Below the pieces are notes generated by a model. It searched no databases, was not told the origin of the DNA, and was given only the letters and a program-made list of their open reading frames with translations. A DNA stretch of 64,000 nt, taken from Octopus bimaculoides (lineage: Eukaryota). The DNA lies in the NCBI RefSeq assembly GCF_001194135.2, contig NC_068994.1, forward strand, positions 41,457,657 through 41,521,656, written 5' to 3'. Below are positions 411-60,003 of this stretch, piece by piece; the stretch's first letter is position 1; each line of letters starts with the position of its first letter. Made by a program: the position numbers and the translations under genes.

Positions 411-447
<37 letters not shown>

Positions 448-714
448 ATTATTGGTGAATTGCTGAACCATATAACCAAATTCTAACTAATTCATTGTTT
501 GATTAAGTATTCAGATTGATTGACCAAATGATTAATCAAACAATTGATTAGTCAATTGGTTAAATGGTTAAACAACCAGATAATGATAATAAAAGACAGG
601 AAATAGAAGCAGTACATGTGTTTATTATTGGCAGAATGACTCTCCTGAGATACAACAAAAGATAGAAATAATATTTTCATATATATATATATATATATAT
701 GAACTAAATGAATA

Positions 715-7594: not shown

Positions 7595-8000
7595 TTTGGC
7601 AGCGTGGCTAGGAAGTTTTCTTTGCAACTACATGGTTTCAGGTTCAGTCCCGCTGCGTGGCACCTTAAGGAAGTGGCTTCAGCCATAGCCCTGGGTAGAC
7701 CAATGCCTTGTGAGTGAATTTAGTAAATGAAAACTGTGTGGAAGCCTGGTATACATGTGAATGCATGTATGCATGTGTTTTTTTGTGCTTGTGCTGTGTT
7801 TGTTCCCCAGCTTCTATTTGACAACAAGTGTTGTTTTTTTTACATCCTGTAACTTAGCAGTTCAACAAGAAAGACCTGTAGAATAAGTATCAGATTTAGA
7901 CAAAATAAATCAGAAGTACCAGGGTCAGTTTGTTTGGCTAAAATCTTCTGAGGTGGTGCCACAGCATGGCCACAGTGCAATGACTAAAACAAGTAAAAGA
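7595..8000 (+). mobile_element. SINE family A, diverged
   Basis: ggttcagtcccgctgcgtggcacc head; ...cagcatggccacagtgcaatgactaaaacaagtaaaaga tail. Confidence 0.8.
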
Positions 8001-8264
8001 TGAACGACGAAAATACTGTCTCTTATATTGTAATTATTAAATCTAAGACATCGAATTTCATACAAAAGTTATCTTTAATAATAATGTAATTATCTCTTAA
8101 AGAAATCTTAAACCATATACCACAAAAAAATCTATTATTACAATAAGTAAAACTGAAAATGCTATCTCACAGCTGAAAACATTAAAACACAATCTTTCAA
8201 AAAACTGAGAATGCTAAAATATAATTTGGTAGCAACCTAGACCACTAAAATACTATCTACTAAG

Positions 8265-8945: not shown

Positions 8946-10431
8946 ATATAAAAGATTGGTGTATATCTACTAAAATAACTTGGTTATCAAGTGCACATTT
9001 GATACAGAATGATTACAGAATGATGACAAATGATCTAGAAATTAAGAAATTAATGAGCTACTGTTGAATAAATCTAACAAAAATTAAGAATTTTGTAACA
9101 AATCCAAAACAGAAGTAACAATGAAATAAATATTTTACAAATAAGAATTGTAGAATAGCTTGGAAAAAATGTCACTTGTTAGATGTGAAGATGGAGTAAA
9201 ATGTCAAACATGACAGTCAAAACATGAAACAAAGAATGACACGAAAGGTGGTGCTTTGCTGTAAATGCTTTTGGCCAATCATTATAGAATACAGTGATTG
9301 ATTTATACAAATGTCACAACTTAAGAAGGAATCAATTGAAATATATTATTTCCTGAAAAACAAAGCCCAAACTGTTTTGAGTGTGAAAGCTAAATTCCAT
9401 AAACAAGTCACCTTTTTTCTAATCTTCTTGCATAAATATACATAGCAGGCGACCTCTTTGATGCAAAAGTGATATCTCCTTGATCAACCTGTTTAATAAC
9501 CTTGGTTAGGTTTGATTATGCAGAATGAAGGTACAGAGAAAGTTAATCAAGTAATTAAGAACAGCTTGTTGGGTATTTCTCACATATACACTATATTACA
9601 GTCAGGTTGGTTATTGAGGAATATTGTCTACTAAGGAATGTTGTTTTCAACCGCTCTGTGGATGAGTCAGTAATTTTTTAATGATTTATTTGTGAAGAGA
9701 GCAACACGAGTTTGATTAGTGAATGAAGTTTTAAATTTGTAAGATTTGCTGGAAAATTATAATTAACCAAGAACAAAATTTAGACAGAATGTTCCTATCA
9801 ATGTTGCAGTATTTTTGTCCTGCTTAAGTTTTGTTTGCTATTTTTTCTTCTATAAGGTGAGAGATACTGAATTTTAAAATGGTTGTAATATCATCCAAGA
9901 TTACTCCTGACATGGTTAGGTATTTTTAGAAATTTGAATATACAGTTGCTGAGGCAGCATTCTACAGCAATCATCTAAGCTGGTGATTTTTAAATGGTGT
10001 GCTGCTGCATCACACTGGTTCTCTGTAAGAAATCTTATAAAATTAAGGCTTTGGAAAGTCCTATAATAATACTTGAGCATCTTGAAAAATATACCTTTCA
10101 TTTTATTTTACACATATATTTCCTTTTATTCTTTTAAGTGTTTCAGCTTTAAAGCTGCAGTCATGTTGGGGCACCACCGTTGTATGATTAATAAAATAAA
10201 ATAATAGGCCTTTTATTTTTCTAAAATTTTAACTTCTATTTTTAAGAAAAATTTTCTATACAAAACATACATGTAAATTTTATTTAATTTCATCTCTAGT
10301 ATACCACAAATTCAAAATAATTAAAAGCCATTTATATAATCTATTTGCATATTGAAACATGCAGTGTAGCGACCTGACCACCTGTGAAAATATGGCAAAA
10401 TGAATGTTATGATGAGTGGGACACTTAATGA

Positions 10432-10465
<34 letters not shown>

Positions 10466-11303
10466 GTATATATATATATATACAGCTTAATCTCTCAAGC
10501 ATTTTGTAGTTTCTAAGTCCTGCTCAGCTGTCCTTCTTACCTATCTAATACTTTTTCATGTGTCATTTGCCTCTTCTGCTCACTACAACATGTGTGTAGC
10601 TTATTGTGTATGTGTGTGTGTGTATACATATATATGTATATATACACTCATACACATTCATATATAGAATATAAAGAAAGTCAGGAGATATGATATGAAT
10701 ATATTTATTTCACTAGTTGATATCTAAACGATTACAATCATATCATAGCCAACATCATGGAAAAATGATTTATCTTAGTATATAACAAATTATTTTGCAT
10801 GTCTTCAATAGTGTATACGTTATAAATTATATAGTATTATTGTATATTTTACAAGCTAATACAGAATGAATATAACCATGATATTCTATGAATTTGATGA
10901 ACTAGCCTTTTATACCGGTGTTAGTTCATAAAATGTACAGTAATACTATGTAATTCATAACATATACACTATTGCAGACATGTAAAATAATTTGTTATAC
11001 ACTAAAATAAATTATTTTTCCATGATATCAGCTGTGATATGAATATAATCATATGGACATCTACTGGTGAAATAAATATATTCATCGCATATCCTCTGAC
11101 TTTCTTTATATTCTATCTACTCCTAATGAAATAATTATTACTAATTAGATTTACAGGATTTCAACTGCATAGGACTATACATTATACCCCTGTGACTTGG
11201 TTTACTATGTGGTTGGCAGCCTGGTTCACTAAAGGAGCTTTTTTGTTAGTACCACCAGATAAAATAAATCCATATATTGTGCATTAAATAAATCCATATA
11301 TTG

Positions 11304-11335
<32 letters not shown>

Positions 11336-11340
<5 letters not shown>

Positions 11341-12095
11341 AAAATAAAAAATAATAATAATAAGGCAGAATGCTAAACTGAAAGCATAGTTTAATATAGA
11401 TGTGCATAAGGAGGACTAAAAAGGATTTCTAACCGGCTTTCATTGCATGGCAAATTTTCAAGAAGAGGGGAAATGAAAATAATGTTTTTTACAAAAATAT
11501 AAAAAATATATAAAAAAATGAATATACCAATGCATTATATTGTCTTTGAGTTTTTAAAGTTCAATGGTAATCCATGTAGATAATTGTTAGATAGATTAGG
11601 ATGCATGGAATTAAGAATCATGTTGTGTTTAAAAAAGGCTGAGAGTTTATGTGTTAAACAGGAAGTGTGGTGTCAAGACAGGAAGTGTGTGTAAGGGAAG
11701 ACAATTCTGTGGGTTTTTATTCTTTAGTTTTAGTAAAGAGTAAAAACCCACAAAATTGTCTTCCCTTACACACACTTCCTGTTTAACACATAAACTCTCA
11801 GCCTTTTTAAAACACAACACCATTCTTAATTCCATGCATCCTAATCTATCTAACAATTATCTACATGGATTACCATTGAACTTTAAAAACTCAAAGACAA
11901 TATAATGTATTGGTATATTTATTTTTTTATATATTTTTGTAAAAAACATTATTTTCATTTCCCCTCTTCTTGAAAATTTTCCATGCAATGAAAGCTGGTT
12001 AAAAATCCTTTTTAATTCACCTTATGCACATCTATATTAAAATATGCTTTCAGTTTAGCATTCTGCCTTATTATTATTATCTTCTATTTTCCTAT
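11336..12095. repeat. ~760-bp near-perfect palindrome (foldback/MITE-like element)
   Basis: Arm 11336-11726 is the reverse complement of 11734-12095, with a 7-nt loop (gttttag). An 86-bp uninterrupted match spans 11533-11618. TA dinucleotides flank at 11337-38 and 12093-94. Confidence 0.95.
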
Positions 12096-12499
12096 TATTT
12101 CTCCACGTGCGGTTAACGCAACTCCACCATATATGCATGTATGTGTGCACATATATAATGAAAAAAGGGAAAACACACACTTACCTTCAATTGGCCGGGG
12201 AACAGTTATTGAATGCCGCGTGGTTTCTAAATTGATGTAGGTTTGATAGGTTTGGTTATTGTATTCAAAAGTTCGATAGTATGGCAATAACAAGTAAAGA
12301 TCTGCTATTATTCTTTACAAATATATTGAGTGTGTTGGTGCCTTACAGTGCATTAGTTTTAGATATCAGACTAAGCTCAAGAACCCTCTTCTGTTTCATC
12401 TTTTACAATCAGATTTTTTTTTTTAATATATAATTTCAACAAATGCCTTCAAAGGTCTGATATGTATATAATTACAGAATATGTATGTGCTCTTGTTTT

Positions 12500-13126
12500 T
12501 TGGGTTTTTTTTTTCGCTTTTATTTATTCTTTCTTTTTTTTTTGAAGTTTTCGAGATGTACTTCAATTCTTTAGTTTGTTTTTTGTTTTTTTGTTGTTTT
12601 TTTTTTTCTTTCTTTAAGTATTGTAAAGAACTTCATCCATGCTGCCTTCAACTTATGAACTCCGTTAAAATAAAAGACGAAAAAATGTTTGTGAACATAA
12701 ACAAGTATTAGTGTTATGTACAAGTTATATCAAAGGCTATATCACTTTTTTTTCAATTTTTTTTTATAGTTATAGGTATTGTATAAAACATTGTCCTCCA
12801 TACATTTCAGATTTGATCAGAAAATTACATTTATAAGGCTGGGATAGTACAACATATGTTACAGGGTGAGTGCGTATGATATTTACACTGTATTGTTTGA
12901 ATGGAATGTATTAATGATATAGTTTGGCATACAGACAGAACAATATTATCAATATAGTAACAAAAAAAATGACAAGCTGGAAATATATATATTCTCAGCT
13001 TGTATCATATCTGGAACAGTATACCAATTATTTTTATCAACAACAATTTCATAGTGTTTGGCTTTATTGGGTGTTCTCTTTTAAACTTGTTTTAGGTAGA
13101 CTCTAAAGCAACTGAATATACATCTT
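12500..13126 (-). other. Candidate 3' UTR of the protocadherin
   Basis: Non-repetitive A/U-rich sequence after the TGA. Overlapping AATAAA hexamers (AATAAATAAA, minus strand) at 12519-12528. Confidence 0.35.
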
Positions 13127-13197
13127 TCATAAAGGTTTGATAACGGTTATAGGTTGTAGATTAGATCTGGGCTTGTTCACCAATGGAGTGCAGGAAT
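13127..13197 (-). CDS. Pcdh: Probable terminal coding exon of the protocadherin: (D)SCTPLVNKPRSNLQPITVIKPL*
   Basis: Very strong acceptor ccattctattttcttcttttacttcttcag|AT. Phase-1 joining gives GAT plus 22 codons and TGA at 13129-13127, followed by AU-rich UTR-like sequence. No homology check was possible. Confidence 0.55.
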
Positions 13198-16178: not shown

Positions 16179-16329
16179 CTGGAATCTCTTCATACTCTCC
16201 GGAGTCACCTTCACTCCAACCATGTCCGAAATCAGTATGAGAAGACAGAGTCTCTCTCCTAAGACTTGGAATCATAAGTGTACTATCTTCTAGTATGCTG
16301 TCTGTAGTTGCTATTCGCTGGATACACAT
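16179..16329 (-). CDS. Pcdh: Protocadherin second coding exon, cytoplasmic: MCIQRIATTDSILEDSTLMIPSLRRETLSSHTDFGHGWSEGDSGEYEEIP
   Basis: Acceptor tattattttccttacttccag| is phase 0, matching the upstream donor. 151 nt open frame. Donor CCAG|GTGAGT is phase 1. The peptide resembles the acidic DSGxG-type motif of protocadherin tails (recalled similarity, not searched). Confidence 0.8.
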
Positions 16330-16532: not shown

Positions 16533-17219
16533 NNNNNNNNNNNNNNNNNNNNNNNNNNNNNNNNNNNNNNNNNNNNNNNNNNNNNNNNNNNNNNNNNNNN
16601 NNNNNNNNNNNNNNNNNNNNNNNNNNNNNNNNNNNNNNNNNNNNNNNNNNNNNNNNNNNNNNNNNNNNNNNNNNNNNNNNNNNNNNNNNNNNNNNNNNNN
16701 NNNNNNNNNNNNNNNNNNNNNNNNNNNNNNNNNNNNNNNNNNNNNNNNNNNNNNNNNNNNNNNNNNNNNNNNNNNNNNNNNNNNNNNNNNNNNNNNNNNN
16801 NNNNNNNNNNNNNNNNNNNNNNNNNNNNNNNNNNNNNNNNNNNNNNNNNNNNNNNNNNNNNNNNNNNNNNNNNNNNNNNNNNNNNNNNNNNNNNNNNNNN
16901 NNNNNNNNNNNNNNNNNNNNNNNNNNNNNNNNNNNNNNNNNNNNNNNNNNNNNNNNNNNNNNNNNNNNNNNNNNNNNNNNNNNNNNNNNNNNNNNNNNNN
17001 NNNNNNNNNNNNNNNNNNNNNNNNNNNNNNNNNNNNNNNNNNNNNNNNNNNNNNNNNNNNNNNNNNNNNNNNNNNNNNNNNNNNNNNNNNNNNNNNNNNN
17101 NNNNNNNNNNNNNNNNNNNNNNNNNNNNNNNNNNNNNNNNNNNNNNNNNNNNNNNNNNNNNNNNNNNNNNNNNNNNNNNNNNNNNNNNNNNNNNNNNNNN
17201 NNNNNNNNNNNNNNNNNNN
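16533..17219. other. Assembly gap (others near 28388-28440, 39421-39623, 51646-51768, 53173-53182, 54029-55016, 59864-60003)
   Basis: Runs of N, almost all flanked by (TA)n/(TG)n. Confidence 0.99.
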
Positions 17220-20420: not shown

Positions 20421-20465
20421 ACTACTAAATCAAAACAATTTTATAACAAAGGATGATATCCTTAC

Positions 20466-22853
20466 CTGAGTAGTTGCTGGTAATGTTCTGGATGAAGAGG
20501 AATCCCAGTCGTTTTGTGATTCAACATCTGGATAAAGCTGACTGCGTGATCTAAACATCTGGCTACTTCTTATGTCATCTGGACTTCTTAATGTTACAAT
20601 AGAATTACTAGTCTCTGATATTAAGTTCCTCTTTTCTCTACAAAACTTATTCATATGATTTAATTTTGCCCCATGAGAGGTATTTTTCAAATTGTTGTAT
20701 CTCACAACACAAGCTGTTATGAAAATAACAAGAGCCACTGATAATATTACTGCTACAACAACAATAACAATGGCTAAATTAAGATTTATCATTCCATCTG
20801 TTTGTTTGTATGTTGCAGTGAGCATTTCTGATGTGTTATTGCTTAATATGACTTTCAAAGACAGTGTAGTTGTTGCTGATAGTGTGGGAGTACCATTATC
20901 TTTGACAGCTACTTTTAGCCTGTATGTCCCAGCATCAGTTTGGTAAATTGGACGAGAGAATGACAAGTGACCAGTGTAAGGATTCACTTTGAACATCAGC
21001 TTGTCATCTCCTCCCACTATTTCATACCTGAGAAAAGCATTCATTCGACTGTCTCTGTCAGAAGCTTTCAGAACAGTAATATTATTCTTTGACTGAGGAT
21101 GATAAAAAATATCAAGACTGAAAGGATTAATGTTAGGGAAAACAAAATATGGAGCATTGTCATTTTCGTCCATAACTTCAACAATAACATTTGCTGTGTT
21201 GTTTAAAGAAGGAATTCCGTTGTCTTTTACTAAAACTTTAAATTTATAAATTTCTTTTTGTTCACAATCTAATGTTCTTGTAGTTGATATAAAACCATTT
21301 TTTGTAATTTTAAAAGGAAGGTAATTTTTATTGCTTTCTAATAAGGAATAAGTTAACTCTCCTCCAACTCCAGTGTCTTGATCAGTGGCATTAATAAAGC
21401 CAATTGGAAAATTTGGTTTCTGATTTTCGTAGGTCAAAAATTTGAAGGTTTGTTTTGAGAACTGTGGCCTTAAATCATTGACATCTAATACTTGAATTGA
21501 GAACTTGCTCTCTGTTTTTAAGGGTGGGGTACCTTTGTCTTGACAAGATATTGTGATATCATAATTGTCTTCTTTCTCCCTATCAACAGCTTGTTTTACA
21601 ATTACTTTATATTCTTTGGACCCTAAACTTAAAAGCTGAAAAGTTTTATGCTTTAGATCACAAATGACTTCACCATTCTTTCCAATATCATTATCAGTAA
21701 CCATTACATAAGCAATGAAACTGCCAATTTTGATATCTTCAGAAATAGCCACTCTGTTTTCAGTTAATGCACTCACAAAGTTCACATCAATATTTGGTGC
21801 ATTGTTTTGTTGGTTCACCACATAAACAACAACCATTGCAATTGAACTCAAAGGAGGTCGTCCTCCATCAGTAGCTCGAATGAATAGCTTATGAACCAAC
21901 GTTTGACCCAATGCAAATATCTTTTGTAGGAAAATTTCTCCAGTTCGTTTATTGAGTTTAAAGTGATCTTTAGCAATATCTGATGTTTTCAGTGTAAAAT
22001 GATAAGTGATATTTGCATTTTCTCCAGTGTCCATATCTTTAGCTGAGAGAACAACAATAGGGGCTTCTTGATGTAATTCATTTTTTATTGAAACATTGTA
22101 GATATTCTGTGAGAAAATAGGAACATTATCATTGACATCAGTAACTGATATCTTTACACCTAGAATACTTTGTTTTGTAGGATATCCTCCATCTTTTGCA
22201 ATTACTTGAAGTGAATAAATATCTTTTACTTCTCGATTTAGTCGTTCTCCTAAATTGATGGACAATTCTGAGGTGCCATCCAGGTTCTTAGAAACTGTTA
22301 ATGTAAATGGCTCATCTTTCTTTTTCTTTAACTGATATGTAATCTGTGAATTCAAAAGCCCTACGTCTTTATCTACAGCATTAGGTAATGATCTTCTGGC
22401 TCCTTTGCTATCATCTTCAGAAAATTCTATTGTTATTTCTTTCTTTTGAAATTGAGGTTTATGGTCATTAATATCTTCTAATATTATCTTGATTTTAAGT
22501 ATTTTCATAAATGTTTCAGCTCTTTTAACTGCAACTTTCACTATCCTGAAACATTCTGTGTTGTACATACAAAGAGACTCAGCATCCAGCTTTCTAGCAG
22601 TAAATAATTTTCCTGTCTTTGAAACATTGAACAGCCCTGAACTTTTGGTTGTGCTATGCTGAAGTTGACTAAATGTAATCAAATGGTGATCCTCCAGATG
22701 TACATTGTGTAGCAAATGTGAATCCGATGCAATATCTCCTAAAAAGCTTCCTTCACTCTTTTCCTCCTCCACATGGTAGGTGAGGTCGACGCAGGTGGAG
22801 ATTGAAACCAGACACAACAATGTCCACAGAGTTACCAGTGTATTATGACTCAT
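20466..22853 (-). CDS. Pcdh: Protocadherin, large first coding exon (796 codons): signal peptide, EC1-EC6, TM helix, proximal cytoplasmic tail. Family-level call only.
   Basis: ATG at 22853 gives MSHNTLVTLWTLLCLVSISTC (signal peptide) then VDLTYHVEEEK. Six cadherin repeats with linkers DINDH, DVNDN, NQQNN, DVNDL, DENDN, plus DxD and xDxG motifs. EC1 has C-X5-C (CMYNTEC). TM is LNLAIVIVVVAVILSVALVIFITACVV. Exon ends at CAG|GTAAGG (phase 0) at 20466. Confidence 0.95.
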
Positions 22854-22902
22854 TACTGCTACAACTTTTGATAAGATGCTAATCTCAAAACATCCCAGGC
22901 AT

Positions 22903-22925
22903 CTGAAAGAAAAGAAGAAAAATAT
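22903..22925 (-). promoter_or_regulatory. 3' splice acceptor preceding the large coding exon; implies an upstream non-coding exon
   Basis: Minus strand tttcttcttttctttcag|ATGCCTGGG, 50 nt upstream of the signal-peptide ATG. The ORF-track N-terminal extension (IIFFFFSF, from a TTG) is this pyrimidine tract. Confidence 0.8.
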
Positions 22926-24407
22926 TATTTTTAAAGTAAACAGTAACAAGTAAAGAAATTAAATATCATTATTACTATAAACTATCTCTATAATTCAGTT
23001 TGCATATTATTTAGCTATTAGTCAACACTGACTGAGCAGACTTATGATCAGTATTCCAGCCATGATCATCTCATCTCTGTACCTAGGGCTACAATATCCA
23101 ATGTAACATTTCATTTTATTAAATAGCAGATAGTGATTTGAGAAATATTTGGCTGCTAATTCTGCAAAAACTTCTTTGTTGGTTTGTGAAGAACTTGGTT
23201 GTGGTCCTCCAGATATATACTTAACCCTCATTTCTAGCTGTGACCACCCTAACTTTTCCTTTTGTGCAGGGAACTGGGGACAACATCATTCAATGTATGC
23301 TGTGATTTGAGAGAGAGAGATTTGGTTGCTATTTTTAGCAAACTGTGTGACAATGAAGTAACTCCCTTGTTGGCTTGTGAAGAGTGTAATTGCTTAGAGC
23401 ATTAGAATGAATCCTTTTATACATGAATCAATGGCACTCTACTGACCTGCGACTATTCAATAAAGAATTAATCTTCTTGAATGTAAAATACTATCAACTG
23501 AGAAAAATCTGTGCTAATGCAATTAGCTGTTGATTATTTATTTTTTTGAGGAAAATGAATTCTAAGTGAAACCAGTGATATTGAGTGATGTCTAGAGTTT
23601 GTGTCTTCTCTCTATGTTTCTGTTATTGATGAAGCCTTACTAGAATAGAAAGCCAAATTATTTCTATACAAGATTTGCAAAGTAAAGTTTTAATTCTATA
23701 ACCAACTAAGCCATTTCAAATAAAGTAAAGTTTGGATATGCTTATCTAAATATATCATCAGACACTCTTTACAATAACAAAAAACATGACTTCTGTCAGG
23801 GTTGTTGCAGCAACATTATAAGACTTCAAGCAAAGCAATGCACTAGAGTCCCCTACATTCACACAACTAGAGCATACATAGATCAGTATGGAGCCTCCTT
23901 AGGTCCATGAGGTGCCTTGCACTGAAAACTACCCTTGTGTTCATGCTTTAAGACAGCACTAGCTTCCAAGCCTAACCATGTAGGTGGATGAACTTCATAA
24001 AGGACATACATTTGCCAAGTTAATGAAAAACTAGACCAGTACAAAGCTGATTTAGATGAGGATCAGTTGTGATTTAGGTGGGGGCCTAACATCTCTTGCA
24101 TTGTGGACTATCTCTTTCTGGAAATGTAAGATGCTGAAGAAGAGAGAACTATTAACCAACTGTTAACCCTCTACTGTACTCTCAATTTCAAATGGATCTA
24201 GGACAACTGATGGCAGCCAATTACCTTCAGCTCAACTCACTGCAGCGAACTAGCTGCTACTAACTCAATGCTGATATTAGAAATAAGACAACATGCTATG
24301 ATATAGAAAAACTAATTTTTCTTTAATTAAAATTCTGTGTTATGAAATAAGTCTCATAAACTCTTTATTAATGTTAAAACTAATGCAATAGGTTTTAAAA
24401 TAGTATC

Positions 24408-24481: not shown

Positions 24482-24770
24482 TTAAAGTATTTAATAGTAC
24501 TAACACCTATTTTAGTTACACATTCCTTTAAGACATTTTGGATGGTATGATATTAAATGTTATAAAAATTACATTTTATGGATATTTTTGTAAATATTAA
24601 CACTTATCATGTATTTTGTTTCCAATTTTGACAATGGGTAATCTGAGAGGATTCTAATCTAATAACACATGGGGTAATTTTTGCATCTGCCCTTTAAGTT
24701 TATTTTTCCAATACTTTAGAAAAAAAATATTGATACAATTATTGCAATTTTGACAGTATTTTAGGTTACT

Positions 24771-24975
24771 CTTTTACTTGTTTCAGTCTTTTGACTGTGG
24801 CCATGCTGGAGCACCGCCTTTAGTCGAGCAAATCAACCCCAGGACTTATTCTTTGGAAGCCTAGTACTTATTCTTTCGGTCTCTTTTGCCGAACCGCTAA
24901 GTTACAGGGACATAAACACACCAGCATCGGTTGTCAAGCGATGTTGAGGGGACAAACACAGACATACAAACACAT

Positions 24976-25020
<45 letters not shown>

Positions 25021-25170
25021 TACGACAGGCTTCTTTCAGTTTCCGTCTACCAAATCCACTCACAAGGCATTGGTCGGCCCGAGGCTATAGTAGAAGACAC
25101 TTGCCCAAGATGCCACGCAGTGGGACTGAACCCGGGACCATGTGGTTGGTAAGCAAGCTACTTACCACAC
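24771..25170 (-). mobile_element. tRNA-derived SINE, family A, near full length and little diverged
   Basis: Minus-strand head gtgtggtaagtagcttgcttaccaaccacatggtcccGGGTTCAGTCCCactgcg (A/B-box-like), internal (TA/TG)n, and a 3' part ending ctccagcatggccacagtcaaaagactgaaacaagtaaaag. Multi-copy in this window. Confidence 0.9.
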
Positions 25171-26348
25171 ATTTTATTTGTTAGATCTAGAATTAAAATT
25201 TTTAATTCTAAAATTTGATCATAGCAGCAAGCTGGCTGCTATAAACTAGTTGCAGTAAGTTGAGTTGTGGCTTGTTGGCAGTGACCAGGTAACTGATTTC
25301 TATCTCAGATGGCCAAAATTCTGAAATTCCTCTTCTAAATGGAATAAAAAGAAATTAATGATTTTTGGATTTGTATTTATTTAGTTTGTAGAATTATTTT
25401 GGTACTTTGGGAGGATCATACTGCTAATGAAAACACATGCACCAGCTGTACTTAACTTCTATTACTTCAGTTTTATTATAAATTAACTAGAATAGTTTAT
25501 TTATTTGTTTATTGATTACTTAATTCATTATAAAACTAAAGTGATATACAAACACTATGACCTTCCCAAAGTGCAACAGTAAAAGGAATACTAATAAAAG
25601 ATATACATGCTGTATATCTTTAAGTCATTTTTTATTTTCATCTTTTTATATATTTTTCATATGATACACTAATTATATTTTTGTAAAAAACTAATTGAAT
25701 TAGCTTCCACAAACTATTGATGGCCTATATACAGGAGTTAAAAAATATCTTTTCATCTAAGCATAGTCCACCGAGTATAGTTTAAGCATAAGCTATTGTT
25801 ATACAGAATATCACATAATAATATATAAAGTTATCTTTGAGTTTTATGTAAAATCTGTCAGAACGAATGATGCTATCCGAGAATTTATTCTATAATCACA
25901 TCTCTTTAAATGCTGGATATGTGAATCTTCCTAATGACTTTTTATTCATTTATTTATAATTTTTTTTTTTTTAAATGTGTATATAGTTGAATTATATTGT
26001 AGAAAGAACTATATGTTTGCTTAATAGGCTGTGTCTGCATACAGTTTGTAGATAAATGCAACACTCTTTGACATTAACAACGAATAGCAAGAATAGAAAT
26101 CCACTTAAGACCGGGAATATTCTGGTCAGCTCAGTTCAGATTTTTCACTTCTCAGAGACTCTGGCATTGTTTACTGACTGACTTGCTAAGTGTTTAAGAT
26201 AAATCTTTAACAACAACACTCTGCTACTTTGAGCCCTTAACTACTGGTATTTATTGATTCCAAAATTTATAACAGGAAATCTTAACATCAGAAAGCATAT
26301 TTTCATTTCATATTGCTTTATATGTATTTATTATTACTGTTATTATTA

Positions 26349-28034: not shown

Positions 28035-28254
28035 ACAGGAGATAGATTCAATATAAAATTTTTATTGGGTACAGCATATGTTTTGACCCATCAGTCTGGG
28101 TCTCATTAGGTACATTGATAATTATATGTCTCACTACAGATTTTTAGTGTCAGCTGACACTAAAAATCTATAGTCTGACATATCTTTATCAATGTACCTG
28201 ATGGGTCAAAACATGTTGTACCCAATAAAGATTTAATACTGAATCATCTCTTGT
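28035..28254. repeat. ~220-bp loopless palindrome (MITE-like)
   Basis: Centre agatttttagtgtcag|ctgacactaaaaatct at 28153/28154. Arms continue as tttattgggtaca...tgtacccaataaa and ttttgacccatcag...ctgatgggtcaaaa, with an extra ~13 nt in the left arm. Confidence 0.9.
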
Positions 28255-28819
28255 TAATTAATAATATATATATATATAAATCCCCAAAAATGAAGAACAA
28301 ACACAAATCAGCAACATGAGAAAAGGAAGATGGAGGAAAAAGATCGCCAACGATTCACATGTGGTTACATTTTGGGGGTGAGGTGTGNNNNNNNNNNNNN
28401 NNNNNNNNNNNNNNNNNNNNNNNNNNNNNNNNNNNNNNNNTAGATATATATGCATATATGTATATATACACACACACACTTTCTTTTAACAGAGTTTTGT
28501 AGCCTGAAACCATTGGTTTTTATATTTTCACTGTCATTCAGCTGAAATTTGTTTGCTTAATGTTTGTTTTTTCATGCAAATGTGGGTTGGATGGGGATTA
28601 ATTTGAAGCAGAATTTTATGGCTGGATGCTCTTCCTGTCACCAACCACAACCATTTTACAGTTAAAAAATTTTCTATTTCAAAGGTTTTCAAAAGTGCAG
28701 AATGATATGTTATAATATCTATTAGAAATGTAAGTATCATATCACCTTTCTGTTCAGGTGATTACAAGTAAAACTGAAGAATTTCAATATTCACATGCTT
28801 TCACACACACACACACACA

Positions 28820-39420: not shown

Positions 39421-41023
39421 NNNNNNNNNNNNNNNNNNNNNNNNNNNNNNNNNNNNNNNNNNNNNNNNNNNNNNNNNNNNNNNNNNNNNNNNNNNNNNNN
39501 NNNNNNNNNNNNNNNNNNNNNNNNNNNNNNNNNNNNNNNNNNNNNNNNNNNNNNNNNNNNNNNNNNNNNNNNNNNNNNNNNNNNNNNNNNNNNNNNNNNN
39601 NNNNNNNNNNNNNNNNNNNNNNNCATGCGTGTGTACGAGCACACGCATGCATGCATATGTATATTTAAAAACATTTTGGCGCCATTTATGGTTTGGAATT
39701 TTATCTGAGAAGATGAAGGAACAAAAAAAAAAAGAAAGAAAGAACACCGATCTTTTCTAATCAGCAACATAGATATATTCCTCTAAAATATCATGCCATT
39801 TCTCTATGTGACTTATAAGAAAGAGAAGAAAACAAACAGATAGCAAACAGGGAGGGGAGGGGAGGGAGGGAGTGGCAAAAAAATGAAAAATATATAGAAA
39901 ATGAGAGTGAGCAAGAGGGAGTGGTGGGAGCAAGAGAGAACGGTGTGGTGTGGTGTGGGTGGAAATGAATTAATATAGTTTATTGTTTCCATGTTGGGTG
40001 ATGGAAGCAAGCGAAATGATAAGATAGCCAGCTGTCATGATAACATGGAAAATAATAATGACGTTGATGATGATGATGATGATTCAAAAAAGGAAAAAGA
40101 TTGGAAAATATAATATTACAATAACAACAGCAACAACAACATGCTGTCTATTTACTGTAAGGTGAGAACGGTTGATAGTTGAACTTAATGATGTTGTGTG
40201 TCGTAAGTGATGAGAAATGGATGTTTACGTTCAACTAATATTTAATAAATATATCAATAGATATTGCTACATGTGCATATACTCCCCAAATACGCATGCA
40301 TGCACAAAATACACACGCACACACACACACATGGTTGAAAGGCTAGATAGATAGATAGATATATAGATAGATAGATAGATAGATAGATAGACAGATAGAC
40401 AGACAAGCAGACAAGCAGGCATATATATATATACAATAAATATTGCAAAAGCTGAGACCTACAAGTTTATTTTTATATTTCAAGCACTTTGTACCCAACT
40501 CTGGATTATCCAATCTATCCATTTTTAAGGCAGTAACAAATGGTTTCAGAGAGACTTGTCCACATTTTCTAGTGATTGAGCAACTGTATAAAGGCTTTCT
40601 TAATACAAAACTGAAGATTTTGGTTTTAGCTTCAAAGTTTCCTTATTTCTTCCTGCTAAATTTACAATTGCTTAAGTTTACCATTCTGTCATTTGGGTTT
40701 GGGAATCAGTGAAATTGTTAATAGTTATAAGTTTTTAAATACCAGCAATAGAGCCTTTTACAAAATATATATTAGTCCCAGAATAATATAGGATGTAAAA
40801 AGAAGCAAAAATGGGTTGATGTTCCCCATATGGCCAAATCTGAAAATTTCTTCACGGGCATGTTCAGCAAGACATACACACTTTTAAACATGCACATACA
40901 TGCACACATATACACACATGCACACACGTACACAGACACACACACACACATAAACACACAATGAGATATACACGTCAGAGTTTGATAAACTGTAATCATG
41001 ACAGAAACAAGAGTTGACTGATG

Positions 41024-44341: not shown

Positions 44342-44581
44342 CAATACCATCAATTCTGCATTTAAAGAGTTTAGTCATTACTTCAAAGTTTTGTCATTCT
44401 GGCTCTGTCCACAAATGGTCTTAAGACATCATTTATGAAAGGTATAGAGACTTTTTAATATGTAATAGACAGTTATATGTTTGTTGTGGAGAAGTTAAAG
44501 TATATTAGAAGGGACTGGAACAGATTTTTTACTGTCAAGGAGGTGCACAGCTATGCCGCATTATATAGATATATTCTTTTA

Positions 44582-44950
44582 TTCTTTTACTTGTTTCAGT
44601 CATTTGGCTGGGGACATGCTGGAGTACTGCCTTTAGTTGAACAAATCGACCCCAGGACTAATCCTTTGTAAGCCTAGTACTTATTCAATCGGTCTCTTTT
44701 GCTGAACTGCTAAGTTTACAGGGACGTAAACACACCAACATCGGTTGTCAAGTGATGGTGGTGGGACAAACACACACACACACATATATGACGGGCTTCT
44801 TTCTGTTTCCATCTACTAAATCCACTCACAAGGCTTTGGTCAGCCGGAGGCTATAGGTAGAAGACACTTGCCCAAGGTGCCATGCAGTGGGACTGAACCC
44901 AGAACCATGTGGTCGGTAAGAAAGCTACTTACCACACAGCCACTCCTGCA
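44582..44950 (-). mobile_element. SINE family A, near full length
   Basis: Colinear with 24771-25170 throughout (gtgggactgaacc, agaagacacttgcccaagg, gtaaacacaccaacatcggttgtcaag). Confidence 0.9.
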
Positions 44951-47538: not shown

Positions 47539-47642
<104 letters not shown>

Positions 47643-47889
47643 TTTGTGCCTGTGTTTGTCTCCCCACCACTTCTTGACAACCAGTGGTAATGTGTTTACA
47701 TCCCTGTAACTTAGCAGTTCAGTAAAAGGAACAGATAGAATAAGTACTAGTCATTAAAATAATTAGTCCTGGAGTGGATACATTCAACTAAAAATTCTTT
47801 AAGGCAGTGCCCCAGCATGGCCACAGTCTAATGACTGAAACAATTAAAAGATAAAAATAGAAGATATATGACTGTGTGTGTGTGAGAGA

Positions 47890-50141: not shown

Positions 50142-50159
50142 TATATTTAGCTTATTCTT

Positions 50160-50488
50160 TATTCTTTTGCTTGTTACAATTGTTAGATTGTGGCCCTGCT
50201 GGGGCACTGTCTAGAGGAATTTTAGTTGAATGGAGAGACCCCAGTACTTAGTTTATTTTAAGCCATATATTTATTCTATTGGTGTCTTTTAACAAACTGG
50301 TAAGTAACAGGGATGTAAACACACCAGCATTGGTTGTCAAACAGTGGTGGAGAACAAACACACACATATTGATATATTTATATTTATACATATACATGCA
50401 TGCTTGCATACATGTATATGAGTGTGTTTGTGTGTATGTGTGTGTGTGCTGGTGTGTATAAATATGTGTATGAATGTATATATGCATA

Positions 50489-51645: not shown

Positions 51646-51768
51646 NNNNNNNNNNNNNNNNNNNNNNNNNNNNNNNNNNNNNNNNNNNNNNNNNNNNNNN
51701 NNNNNNNNNNNNNNNNNNNNNNNNNNNNNNNNNNNNNNNNNNNNNNNNNNNNNNNNNNNNNNNNNNNN

Positions 51769-53172: not shown

Positions 53173-53182
53173 NNNNNNNNNN

Positions 53183-54028: not shown

Positions 54029-55016
54029 NNNNNNNNNNNNNNNNNNNNNNNNNNNNNNNNNNNNNNNNNNNNNNNNNNNNNNNNNNNNNNNNNNNNNNNN
54101 NNNNNNNNNNNNNNNNNNNNNNNNNNNNNNNNNNNNNNNNNNNNNNNNNNNNNNNNNNNNNNNNNNNNNNNNNNNNNNNNNNNNNNNNNNNNNNNNNNNN
54201 NNNNNNNNNNNNNNNNNNNNNNNNNNNNNNNNNNNNNNNNNNNNNNNNNNNNNNNNNNNNNNNNNNNNNNNNNNNNNNNNNNNNNNNNNNNNNNNNNNNN
54301 NNNNNNNNNNNNNNNNNNNNNNNNNNNNNNNNNNNNNNNNNNNNNNNNNNNNNNNNNNNNNNNNNNNNNNNNNNNNNNNNNNNNNNNNNNNNNNNNNNNN
54401 NNNNNNNNNNNNNNNNNNNNNNNNNNNNNNNNNNNNNNNNNNNNNNNNNNNNNNNNNNNNNNNNNNNNNNNNNNNNNNNNNNNNNNNNNNNNNNNNNNNN
54501 NNNNNNNNNNNNNNNNNNNNNNNNNNNNNNNNNNNNNNNNNNNNNNNNNNNNNNNNNNNNNNNNNNNNNNNNNNNNNNNNNNNNNNNNNNNNNNNNNNNN
54601 NNNNNNNNNNNNNNNNNNNNNNNNNNNNNNNNNNNNNNNNNNNNNNNNNNNNNNNNNNNNNNNNNNNNNNNNNNNNNNNNNNNNNNNNNNNNNNNNNNNN
54701 NNNNNNNNNNNNNNNNNNNNNNNNNNNNNNNNNNNNNNNNNNNNNNNNNNNNNNNNNNNNNNNNNNNNNNNNNNNNNNNNNNNNNNNNNNNNNNNNNNNN
54801 NNNNNNNNNNNNNNNNNNNNNNNNNNNNNNNNNNNNNNNNNNNNNNNNNNNNNNNNNNNNNNNNNNNNNNNNNNNNNNNNNNNNNNNNNNNNNNNNNNNN
54901 NNNNNNNNNNNNNNNNNNNNNNNNNNNNNNNNNNNNNNNNNNNNNNNNNNNNNNNNNNNNNNNNNNNNNNNNNNNNNNNNNNNNNNNNNNNNNNNNNNNN
55001 NNNNNNNNNNNNNNNN

Positions 55017-58152: not shown

Positions 58153-60003
58153 GTGTACATACATATATGTGTGTGTGTGTGTGTGGGAAGTTATTAGTAT
58201 ATGTATATATATATATATTTGTATGTTTATATAAATTACCTTATAGTTCCAAACAAATGGGAAGTACGTATATCCTACCTGCATTACATTATCCATTGGA
58301 ATTTTCTGCCGTGTAAAATAGTTTTCCTGTTGGTGAGAGTTCTTCCGTGACTGGCTGTCTTGTGTGTGACAACAGAATTATGTCGGTGAGTGTGTATAAG
58401 CATGTGTGTATGTGTGTAAATCTCTATTTGTGCCATCTATACTGATGTGTCTGTATGCATTAGATTGATGCACGCTTCAGCAACTGACTGGTTGAATGGA
58501 GTTTGTTGTGGTGGTGAAGAATGCAATTGGTTCTTTCTCTGCTTCACTTACCTAGGCAGCCTTCACATGTCTGTTCTGTGCTGCAGTGTGCTGCTCCGAT
58601 ATTCATATATACCCAACGTCATCCTACACCCACTCCACCCACCCATCCATACATTCAATAACATACTCTGATATCTCTATGAATATTCAATAATGACATT
58701 GTCTTTACAAAAATTGACACCCCACCGTCCGCCCACCGCACTTTCACAGAGGCAAAATGTGTTGCTAAAAATAGTTTTGGGTATAGATTTACGCAAAAAT
58801 CCAATATTTAATCAGAAAGAGAATCATGTTTCTTCTAACAAAAATCCATTCACCACTTGTGTCTGACCTGATATTTTATAAGCTTCCCAAACTCTTATTC
58901 ACTGGATAACTATAACTTAGAGTAAAGAAAATGTTTCCAACAAGCCTGAAAGTGGGTCAAAAATTCGCCACCTTGCAGCTGTTTGTTACCTCACTGATTG
59001 AGATTTAAAAGGGAGAAAAAAAAATTTAACTCAGAAAATAATTTAGATCAATTTTCTGAATAATAAAAGTGAAAAAGATATGAGGAAAGAAGTAAAACAA
59101 TAATGAAAGAAAGAAGTGAAAAAGAAGAAGAAACCTGCTACATCCAAAGATTAAGTCATTGATTTTTCAGCACTGAAGCATCTTTTTTCTCTTCTTTCAC
59201 TATTTTAGTTGTTTCCATAGATTTTATTCACTTGGGCCAATTTATTTCTTTAAAGTGCTTAAGCTACAGTAAAATTCTTGCATATTTATTCTTCATTTGA
59301 TAACATGTGTGCAACAAACACACAAAAATGCATCCTCGTGTGCATGCACATGCAGATGCACATGTACACACTTACACAAAACATGTGCACGCACAAATAT
59401 GTACACATGCACGCACAAACACACACACTCTCGCACTCACATAGAGTAAGTGGCAGAAACAGTACTGTGAAATTTCCGCAACACAGGCCACCACCAGCTC
59501 CTAGGATTCAGTTTCATCTAATACACACATATAAATATATAGTTACAGACACACATGCATATATATATATGTATGTATGTATATATGTATATATATTTAT
59601 ATATACATATATAGATATACATATACATATATGCTAATATCTGCACACACACCCTCAATATATATATACATATACATACACACACACATACACACACACA
59701 CATACACACACACAAATATATATATATATATATATACATACATTTCTATGTATATATGTATGTATGCATATAGATACATACATAAATGCCTACATGTATA
59801 TATGTATATGTATATGTGCATATGTGTGTGTCTATCTATATATATATATACACACATATATATNNNNNNNNNNNNNNNNNNNNNNNNNNNNNNNNNNNNN
59901 NNNNNNNNNNNNNNNNNNNNNNNNNNNNNNNNNNNNNNNNNNNNNNNNNNNNNNNNNNNNNNNNNNNNNNNNNNNNNNNNNNNNNNNNNNNNNNNNNNNN
60001 NNN

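What the first reader, a model, noticed from the sequence alone, without database searches (positions are those of the whole stretch)
11336..12095. ~760-bp near-perfect foldback about 1 kb past the protocadherin stop codon
Seen: arms of 391 and 362 bp, a 7-nt loop, an 86-bp perfect core and about a dozen mismatches. The left arm has a 20-nt insertion duplicating acaggaagtgtg, and TA flanks suggest a Tc1/mariner-type foldback. Established: long dsRNA is the preferred ADAR substrate and a Dicer substrate, and coleoids have extensive A-to-I editing. Inference: an extended 3' UTR or read-through would give this mRNA a ~360-bp duplex for hyper-editing, endo-siRNA production or local ADAR recruitment. 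As DNA it could also extrude a cruciform.
Basis: partly seen in the sequence, partly recalled or inferred. Interest (0 to 1): 0.75.

Follow-up and report, generated by a model that had tools for sequence, protein, structure and literature searches.

The report
Species-specific 760-bp hairpin repeat behind protocadherin
A real 760-bp near-perfect DNA palindrome lies just past the conserved 3' untranslated exon of an Octopus bimaculoides protocadherin gene, but two sister octopus species lack it, so it looks like one ordinary example of the hairpin repeats already known to drive RNA hyper-editing in octopus.

Summary
The arms are 11336-11726 and 11734-12095, with a 7-nt loop, 16 mismatches, two left-arm tandem duplications (9 and 20 nt) and an 86-bp perfect run. 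As RNA it folds at -526 kcal/mol (z = -66). The window is Octopus bimaculoides chromosome CM046614.1. The minus-strand protocadherin beta-16 gene has three coding exons, and its stop codon (13127-13129) lies 1,031 nt before the foldback.

Two results are new. O. vulgaris and O. sinensis lack the foldback at the orthologous site; there a 2.66-kb O. bimaculoides-specific block (9482-12138, which also holds a second foldback) is replaced by 700-800 bp of SINE-rich DNA. Also, the roughly 1 kb after the stop codon is about 99% identical between species, more than the coding exon. That conservation ends at a consensus 5' splice site (AAG|GTAAGT, intron starts at 12184) that Argonauta also has. The foldback starts about 90 nt into this putative intron.

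It is most likely a MITE-like foldback element or a local inverted duplication. It would be a neutral ADAR hyper-editing substrate if transcribed. Copy number and transcription could not be tested here. The endo-siRNA idea is disfavoured by mollusc small-RNA data. It is a new member of a known kind, of low to moderate interest.

The parts
11336..11726 (.). Left arm of the foldback (391 nt). It carries two tandem duplications that the right arm lacks: 9 nt at 11493-11501 and 20 nt at 11658-11677.
11727..11733 (.). 7-nt central loop, GTTTTAG
11734..12095 (.). Right arm of the foldback (362 nt). 346 of its 362 positions match the left arm, with 16 mismatches (11 transitions).
11306..11338 (.). 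(TA)16.5 microsatellite abutting, and overlapping by 3 nt, the outer end of the left arm. It may be the insertion target or a template-switch point.
12096..12184 (-). 89 nt between the putative 5' splice site (intron G at 12184) and the foldback. Cross-species identity drops within this stretch and homology is lost at 12138.
12185..13126 (-). Highly conserved 3' UTR part of the last coding exon (942 nt). The aligned block 12139-13126 is 98.9% identical to O. vulgaris. The exon ends in AAG|GTAAGT, a motif also conserved in Argonauta hians.
13127..13197 (-). Last coding exon segment of protocadherin beta-16 (…DSCTPLVNKPRSNLQPITVIKPL*), with stop codon TGA at 13127-13129
10661..11119 (.). Second, unrelated and older foldback: 202-nt arms 85% complementary with a 55-nt spacer. 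It lies 216 bp from the first and is also preceded by a TG/TA microsatellite.
9482..12138 (.). O. bimaculoides-specific 2.66-kb block holding both foldbacks. O. vulgaris and O. sinensis have 700-800 bp of SINE-containing DNA in its place.

Best explanation
This is a genuine, non-coding, AT-rich (28% GC) 760-bp hairpin-type inverted repeat found only in the O. bimaculoides lineage. Its most likely origin is insertion of a MITE-like foldback DNA element into a TA tract. It sits on the transcribed strand side of protocadherin beta-16, about 90 nt past a conserved 5' splice site that ends the gene's strongly conserved 942-nt 3' UTR exon. It is therefore probably part of the primary transcript, either as intron or as read-through RNA. 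If so, it would snap back in cis into a duplex of about 360 bp with two bulges. ADAR would then deaminate it promiscuously, as happens to many such hairpins in octopus. This would be a neutral by-product, not a conserved regulator.

Shown here: the structure, its position relative to the gene, its absence from two congeners, and the conservation pattern of the UTR and donor site. Inferred: the transposon origin, transcription through the element, and editing.
For: The arms differ by 16 substitutions (11 transitions) and two slippage duplications. That pattern fits mutation after the arms became two copies and is unlike assembly error.

The window is 100% identical to O. bimaculoides GCA_001194135.2. 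The gene model is supported by orthologous proteins from O. vulgaris, O. sinensis and O. bimaculoides.

O. vulgaris and O. sinensis are collinear on both sides but lack the element.

The UTR block 12139-13126 is 98.9% identical to O. vulgaris. Other non-coding sequence is 91-94% and coding exon 1 is 97.9%. Conservation falls immediately after AAG|GTAAGT, and Argonauta keeps both the motif and the sequence upstream of it.

Self-complementary elements of 150-460 bp recur in octopod DNA. There are four in this window and four in loci L001 and L002. One is orthologous between species, and five of the eight abut an AT-type microsatellite on one side, which suggests TA-targeting mobile hairpins.

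Literature support: O. bimaculoides has the strongest hyper-editing signal and an exceptional density of long near-perfect dsRNA-forming loci (PMC5625713). Most octopus editing lies in introns and 3' UTRs, where hairpins are enriched (PMC9699675).
Against: No second copy of the element was found in the window, in about 134 kb of other O. bimaculoides sequence, or in about 104 kb from three other octopods. This sample only excludes a SINE-scale family.

The TA 'target-site duplication' is uninformative. There is no clean empty site, because the orthologous segment is rearranged in the sister species.

No RNA evidence was available. Poly(A) signals at 59, 599 and 700 nt after the stop could end mature mRNAs before the foldback. 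No downstream acceptor or exon was identified.
Confidence: 0.55

Rival explanations
1. It is a locally generated inverted duplication. A replication template switch or fold-back repair of a break copied about 360 bp of unique DNA head-to-head, and the two arms have diverged by 4.4% since. On this reading it is a single-copy palindrome, not a mobile element. Its consequences for RNA would be the same as in the best explanation.
For: Only one copy was seen anywhere I could look. The spacer is very short at 7 nt.

Arm divergence is 16/362 = 4.4%. This is comparable to or below the 6-8% neutral divergence between O. bimaculoides and O. vulgaris, which fits formation after the species split and absence from the sister species.

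One end abuts a hairpin-prone (TA)16 tract.
Against: In simple fold-back priming at a broken (TA)n tract, the microsatellite should lie near the centre of symmetry, not at the outer end.

A second, unrelated foldback lies 216 bp away. Several others in octopod DNA show the same 'hairpin plus AT microsatellite' layout, which looks like a class of inserted elements.

Neither arm could be shown to be ancestral, because the orthologous sequence is missing in the congeners.
Confidence: 0.3
2. It is a selected cis-regulatory dsRNA of the protocadherin transcript. Possible roles are an editing inducer element that recruits ADAR to nearby sites, a nuclear-retention or stability signal, or a hairpin-RNA source of endo-siRNAs.
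For: It lies within about 90 nt of a conserved exon end of a neural gene, in an animal with extreme ADAR activity (PMC5625713). Long intronic hairpins are known to boost editing at neighbouring sites in mammals (PMC5654063 and PMC3479170, listed).
Against: It is absent from O. vulgaris and O. sinensis, although they keep the UTR almost unchanged. It has no complementarity to any exon or to the UTR of the gene. Molluscs including O. bimaculoides show no evidence of a dedicated endo-siRNA pathway (PMC12479628). The arms are decaying by ordinary substitutions and slippage, with no sign of compensatory maintenance.
Confidence: 0.07
3. It is an assembly artefact of the short-read O. bimaculoides assembly, that is, a false inverted join.
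For: The assembly is gap-rich (seven N runs in the window). The 86-bp perfect run could confuse a de Bruijn graph. The only independent record I could fetch (L003) comes from the same assembly lineage.
Against: A false hairpin traversal would give identical arms. Here the arms differ on both sides of the perfect run by 16 substitutions and two indels. From my own recollection of the genome paper, not checked here, this species' heterozygosity is far below the 4.4% needed for the arms to be two alleles. No N run lies within 4 kb of the element.
Confidence: 0.05

Closest known systems
Palindromic MITEs that are hyper-edited by ADAR, such as the ~200-bp Harbinger-derived repeat of Xenopus tropicalis (Porath et al. 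2017, PMC5625713)
   Same: Both are short, non-coding elements whose whole length is self-complementary with a short loop. Each can form tight dsRNA alone, without a nearby inverted partner. The same paper names octopus as the other species with exceptional hyper-editing and exceptional density of dsRNA-forming loci.
   Different: This element is 3-4 times longer. No family, copy number or autonomous partner is known for it, and editing of this copy is not shown.
Tc1/mariner-derived (Stowaway-like) MITEs
   Same: Terminal inverted repeats, AT-rich sequence, under 800 bp, no coding capacity, and TA dinucleotides at both ends next to a TA-rich target.
   Different: The TA duplication cannot be told apart from the palindrome itself or from the (TA)n flank. 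The termini (…TA|GGAAAATA…) were not matched to any known transposase-bearing element. Multiple copies were not demonstrated.
Inverted-repeat dsRNAs in introns and 3' UTRs as promiscuous ADAR substrates (inverted Alu pairs in primates, non-coding hairpins in C. elegans; reported in octopus in PMC9699675)
   Same: A long intramolecular duplex sitting in non-coding RNA of a protein-coding gene. The expected outcome is clustered, non-selective A-to-I editing.
   Different: Those cases are usually two separate repeat copies in opposite orientation. Here a single contiguous palindrome with a 7-nt loop does the job. Transcription of this one is only inferred.
Editing inducer elements (Daniel et al., PMC3479170 and PMC5654063)
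   Same: A long hairpin in an intron close to an exon of a neural gene. In principle it could raise the local ADAR concentration.
   Different: The Gabra3 inducer element is evolutionarily conserved and is paired with a defined edited stem. This hairpin is lineage-specific, and no neighbouring edited stem is known.
Fragile long DNA palindromes or quasi-palindromes (closely spaced inverted Alu repeats in yeast models, PMC3855049 and PMC10164571; human AT-rich palindromes)
   Same: Long arms, a spacer under 10 bp and an AT-rich centre. These features favour hairpin or cruciform extrusion. The surrounding 2.7 kb is a hotspot of structural turnover between species.
   Different: 4.4% arm divergence and two indels should reduce extrusion. 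No breakage or polymorphism data exist for this locus.

Membership tests
MITE (non-autonomous DNA transposon), Tc1/mariner type | Terminal inverted repeats at both ends | tested here: met
   The entire element is an inverted repeat: 346 of 362 alignable positions match.
MITE (non-autonomous DNA transposon), Tc1/mariner type | TA target-site duplication flanking the element | tested here: inconclusive
   TA is present on both sides if the element is taken as 11339-12092. However, TA is palindromic, the left flank is (TA)16, and TA is 10.6% of dinucleotides. No 3-bp or 8-bp duplication fits.
MITE (non-autonomous DNA transposon), Tc1/mariner type | Small size and no coding capacity | tested here: met
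   The element is 760 bp. Its longest stop-free stretch is 69 codons, which has no protein homologue.
MITE (non-autonomous DNA transposon), Tc1/mariner type | Many dispersed copies in the genome | tested here: inconclusive
   No other copy was found in the 64-kb window, in about 134 kb more of O. bimaculoides, or in about 104 kb of O. vulgaris, O. sinensis and Argonauta. This excludes only very high copy numbers. The whole genome is not searchable with these tools, and ORF-based look-ups had no power because control non-coding ORFs also failed.
MITE (non-autonomous DNA transposon), Tc1/mariner type | Precise empty site in a related genome or allele | tested here: inconclusive
   The element is absent in O. 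vulgaris and O. sinensis. The whole 2.66-kb segment is replaced there by SINE-rich DNA, so no exact empty site can be read.
Drosophila-type Foldback (FB) elements | Long terminal inverted repeats built of tandem subrepeats | tested here: not met
   TRF finds only two small duplications (9 and 20 nt) in one arm and no subrepeat arrays.
ADAR hyper-editing substrate (long cis dsRNA) | Long, nearly perfect intramolecular duplex | tested here: met
   The minus-strand RNA folds end to end at -525.8 kcal/mol, z = -66, with an 86-bp perfect run.
ADAR hyper-editing substrate (long cis dsRNA) | Lies within a transcribed unit | tested here: inconclusive
   The support is indirect only. The 3' UTR exon is conserved up to a consensus donor about 90 nt upstream of the foldback. 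An O. vulgaris gene model on the same strand runs through the orthologous region. No RNA data were available.
ADAR hyper-editing substrate (long cis dsRNA) | Clustered A-to-G mismatches in RNA reads | not testable with these tools
   This needs O. bimaculoides neural RNA-seq mapped with a hyper-editing pipeline.
Hairpin-RNA (hpRNA) endo-siRNA locus | 21-23-nt Dicer products from the arms and a host siRNA pathway | not testable with these tools
   No small-RNA data were available here. The literature argues against it: no evidence of a dedicated endo-siRNA pathway in molluscs, including O. bimaculoides (PMC12479628).
Editing inducer element | Evolutionary conservation together with a neighbouring site-selectively edited stem | tested here: not met
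   The element is absent from both congeners. It has no complementarity to the gene's exons or UTR.
Local inverted duplication (fold-back or template-switch palindrome) | Single copy, with one arm orthologous to ancestral sequence at the site | tested here: inconclusive
   It is single-copy as far as could be seen. The orthologous segment is missing in the only close relatives, so neither arm can be shown to be ancestral.

The most novel reading that the evidence does not exclude
The foldback is a recently acquired, O. bimaculoides-specific regulatory hairpin in a 3' UTR intron of protocadherin beta-16. By recruiting ADAR right next to a conserved splice donor, it would change editing, splicing or nuclear export of this one deeply conserved protocadherin. 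That would make it a natural example of a new long dsRNA rewiring a neural gene in a coleoid.
Probability: 0.05. Interest if true: 0.6.

Novelty: new member of a known kind. Interest (0 to 1): 0.27.

Why it matters
On its own it matters little. Long hairpin-forming repeats in introns and 3' UTRs are already recognised as the main ADAR substrates in octopus, and this copy is not conserved.

It is still a clean, datable test case. It is a single contiguous palindrome with a 362-bp stem, present in O. bimaculoides and absent in O. vulgaris and O. sinensis, next to an almost invariant 3' UTR. Comparing editing, isoforms and expression of the orthologous protocadherin across these species would show directly what a newly arrived long dsRNA does, or fails to do, to its host transcript.

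The more interesting by-product is the UTR itself. It is 942 nt, more conserved than the coding sequence, and it ends at a conserved splice donor. That hints at an unannotated 3' UTR intron in a cephalopod protocadherin.

Tried and rejected
- **Copy number via proteins.** Exact look-ups of two ORFs from the foldback and a homology search with the 69-aa central ORF found nothing. Two control ORFs from ordinary non-coding DNA of the window were also not on record. The method therefore has no power, and these negatives are discarded.
- **Metagenome scan.** An exact 29-mer from the perfect run found nothing in the metagenome contig collection, as expected for an animal sequence.
- **Presence near paralogues.** Two further O. 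bimaculoides protocadherin loci (L005, 102 kb; L006, 32 kb) contain neither a copy of the element nor a copy of the conserved UTR. A third locus was too long to fetch.
- **Argonauta as outgroup for the insertion site.** Only exons and UTR patches align, so the site cannot be compared.
- **Search for the exon downstream of the putative donor.** No patches are conserved between Octopus and Argonauta in the available 5.9 kb. The ≥98% islands in the Octopus-Octopus alignment are no more than chance fluctuation would give.
- **Known RNA families and tRNA-derived SINE signatures.** Rfam and ARAGORN find nothing in the window.
- **Relatedness of the two adjacent foldbacks, or of any of the eight foldbacks seen.** None is related to another, apart from one orthologous pair.
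- **ORFs spanning N runs (16.3-17.5 kb, 39 kb, 54 kb, 59.6 kb).** These are artefacts of assembly gaps.

Full report

Yes. Reading 11100-12400 and running the repeat finder shows one continuous inverted repeat. A global alignment of 11336-11726 against the reverse complement of 11734-12095 gives 346 matches, 16 mismatches and two gaps of 9 and 20 nt. The loop is the 7 nt GTTTTAG at 11727-11733.

Both gaps are tandem duplications in the left arm. One is AAAAATATA at 11493-11501. The other is 11658-11677 and repeats ACAGGAAGTGTG. The longest uninterrupted match is 86 bp, pairing 11533-11618 with 11822-11907.

The minus-strand RNA folds end to end at -525.8 kcal/mol. Shuffles give -137 +/- 6, so z = -66. 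Eleven of the 16 mismatches are transitions. Together with the two slippage duplications, this is what two real copies accumulate over time. A false hairpin join in an assembly would instead give identical arms.

**2. Where is it?**

The window is 100% identical to Octopus bimaculoides GCA_001194135.2, chromosome CM046614.1, around 41.46 Mb.

The only cadherin ORF in the window is 20430-22949 on the minus strand. Its annotated orthologues are 869 aa, come from O. vulgaris, O. sinensis and O. bimaculoides, and fall in one 90% cluster. They show that the gene has two more small coding exons. These are found at about 16180-16329 and at 13130-13197, with canonical splice sites and TGA at 13127-13129.

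**3. Comparison with relatives**

The O. vulgaris locus (L001) and the O. sinensis locus (L004) are collinear with the window at 90-96% nucleotide identity.

Homology stops at window 9481 and resumes at 12139. The 2,657 bp in between hold the foldback, a second unrelated foldback (10661-11119; 202-nt arms, 85% complementary, 55-nt spacer) and several TA/TG microsatellites. In both sister species this block is replaced by 700-800 bp made of SINE copies and GT-rich sequence. A sensitive BLAST of the foldback against L001 and L002, and exact-word searches in all loci, find nothing.

The element is therefore specific to the O. bimaculoides lineage at this site. Because the whole segment is rearranged, there is no clean empty site.

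Arm divergence is 4.4%. Local neutral divergence between the species is 6-8%. This is compatible with an origin around or after the split, with one caveat: a transposed hairpin can inherit arm mismatches from its source copy.

**4. The unexpected neighbour**

The sequence between the stop codon and the break in homology (12139-13126) is 98.9% identical between O. bimaculoides and O. vulgaris, with 976 matches, 11 mismatches and 13 gap columns. Other non-coding sequence is 91-94% identical, and coding exon 1 is 97.9%. O. sinensis agrees.

On the minus strand the block ends in CAATTGAAG|GTAAGTGTG, a textbook 5' splice site whose intron starts at 12184. Identity is near 100% up to the AG and falls to about 85% in the next 45 nt, before homology is lost.

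In Argonauta hians (L002), collinear patches of the UTR are recognisable. The last patch again ends in …CCCCGGACAATTACAG|GTAAGA, with nothing alignable beyond it. The UTR is unique to this gene, with no match at two paralogous loci.

I infer that 12185-13197 is an exon followed by an intron, and that the foldback starts about 90 nt into that intron. I could not find the acceptor or the next exon.

The O. vulgaris annotation carries a small gene model (85-aa product) that starts inside the conserved block and runs more than 9.8 kb downstream on the same strand. This is weak, independent support that transcripts continue in that direction.

Conserved poly(A) signals at 59, 599 and 700 nt after the stop mean that shorter mature mRNAs ending before the foldback are also likely.

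**5. What is the element?**

It is non-coding: the longest stop-free frame is 69 codons, with no homologue. It has 28% GC, no tandem subrepeats and no Rfam or tRNA match.

Self-complementary elements of the same general form are common in octopod DNA. I found four in this window, two in the O. vulgaris locus and two in the Argonauta locus. All are unrelated in sequence. One (28035-28254) is conserved at the orthologous O. vulgaris position. Five of the eight are bordered on one side by an AT-type microsatellite.

That recurring layout, the sharp ends and the TA at both ends make a MITE-like foldback transposon inserted into a TA tract the best guess. The TA flank by itself proves nothing, and I could not find a second copy in roughly 300 kb of octopod sequence. 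My attempts to reach the rest of the genome through protein look-ups have no power, because control ORFs failed too.

A local inverted duplication therefore remains a serious rival. An assembly artefact is unlikely for the reasons given in section 1.

**6. How it most likely works**

If RNA polymerase II reads through it, which the conserved exon and donor immediately upstream make likely but do not prove, the RNA will fold in cis into a duplex of about 360 bp with two bulges.

In O. bimaculoides this is exactly the kind of substrate that is hyper-edited. The species has the highest hyper-editing signal among 19 surveyed, and an exceptional fraction of loci that can form long near-perfect dsRNA (PMC5625713). 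In O. vulgaris, most editing lies in introns and 3' UTRs, where hairpins are enriched (PMC9699675).

I see no sign of selection on the element. It is missing from two congeners whose UTR is almost unchanged. It has no complementarity to the gene's exons. Its arms are decaying.

Endo-siRNA production is unlikely, given the reported lack of evidence for a dedicated siRNA pathway in molluscs, including this species (PMC12479628).

At the DNA level, the 7-nt spacer and AT-rich centre favour hairpin or cruciform extrusion. Such quasi-palindromes are known break hotspots (PMC3855049 and PMC10164571, listed). This fits the structural turnover of the surrounding 2.7 kb but was not tested.

**7. Verdict**

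The element is a new member of a known kind: a hairpin repeat that is a probable ADAR substrate. It is lineage-specific and probably neutral.

Interest is low to moderate. The strongly conserved 3' UTR exon with its conserved donor is arguably the more interesting feature of the region.

Noticed in passing
window 12139-13126 (minus strand); donor at 12185|12184: The roughly 1 kb after the protocadherin stop codon is 98.9% identical between O. bimaculoides and O. vulgaris, and O. sinensis agrees. That exceeds coding exon 1 (97.9%) and other non-coding DNA (91-94%). Collinear patches are conserved in Argonauta. The block ends at a consensus 5' splice site, AAG|GTAAGT, also conserved in Argonauta, which suggests an unannotated 3' UTR intron. 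The UTR is not shared with paralogues.
   Followed up: partly
window 10661-11119: A second, unrelated foldback (459 bp; 202-nt arms 85% complementary, no indels, 55-nt spacer) lies 216 bp from the first. It is also preceded by a TG/TA microsatellite.
   Followed up: partly
window 9482-12138 vs L001 25926-26623 and L004 ~24990-25780: A 2.66-kb O. bimaculoides-specific block is replaced in O. vulgaris and O. sinensis by 700-800 bp made of two same-orientation SINE copies flanking GT-rich DNA. The breakpoints are identical in both sister species. Which state is ancestral is unresolved.
   Followed up: partly
window 440-592 and 28035-28254; L001 3935-4187 and 34319-34538; L002 4843-5116 and 28354-28703: Short self-complementary hairpin elements (150-350 bp) are frequent in octopod DNA, and five of eight abut an AT-type microsatellite on one side. 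Window 28035-28254 is conserved at the orthologous O. vulgaris site. L001 34319 and L002 28354 share a GGGAAGRGTCAT motif near their ends.
   Followed up: partly
L001 25124 onward (corresponds to window ~12930, minus strand): The O. vulgaris annotation has a gene model with an 85-aa product. It starts 197 nt after the protocadherin stop, inside the conserved UTR, and runs more than 9.8 kb downstream on the same strand. Its first ORF is only 15 codons before a stop, so it looks like a spurious CDS placed on a non-coding or UTR-derived transcript.
   Followed up: partly
window 20430-22949, 16180-16329, 13130-13197 (minus strand): This protocadherin has 1:1 orthologues at about 98% amino-acid identity in three Octopus species and about 90% in Argonauta hians. 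Its nearest paralogues are 60% identical or less. It is therefore an old, conserved member of the family and not part of the recent tandem expansions.
   Followed up: no
window 24766-25171, 44579-44938, 47621-47856, 50144-50377, 7597-8020 and others: A SINE-like repeat of about 400 bp is present in several copies in both orientations in the window. It has at least seven copies in the 35-kb O. vulgaris locus, several of which are lineage-specific insertions.
   Followed up: no
window 16533-17219, 28388-28440, 39421-39623, 51646-51768, 53173-53182, 54029-55016, 59864-60003: There are seven assembly gaps (N runs). All long 'ORFs' listed across them are artefacts.
   Followed up: yes
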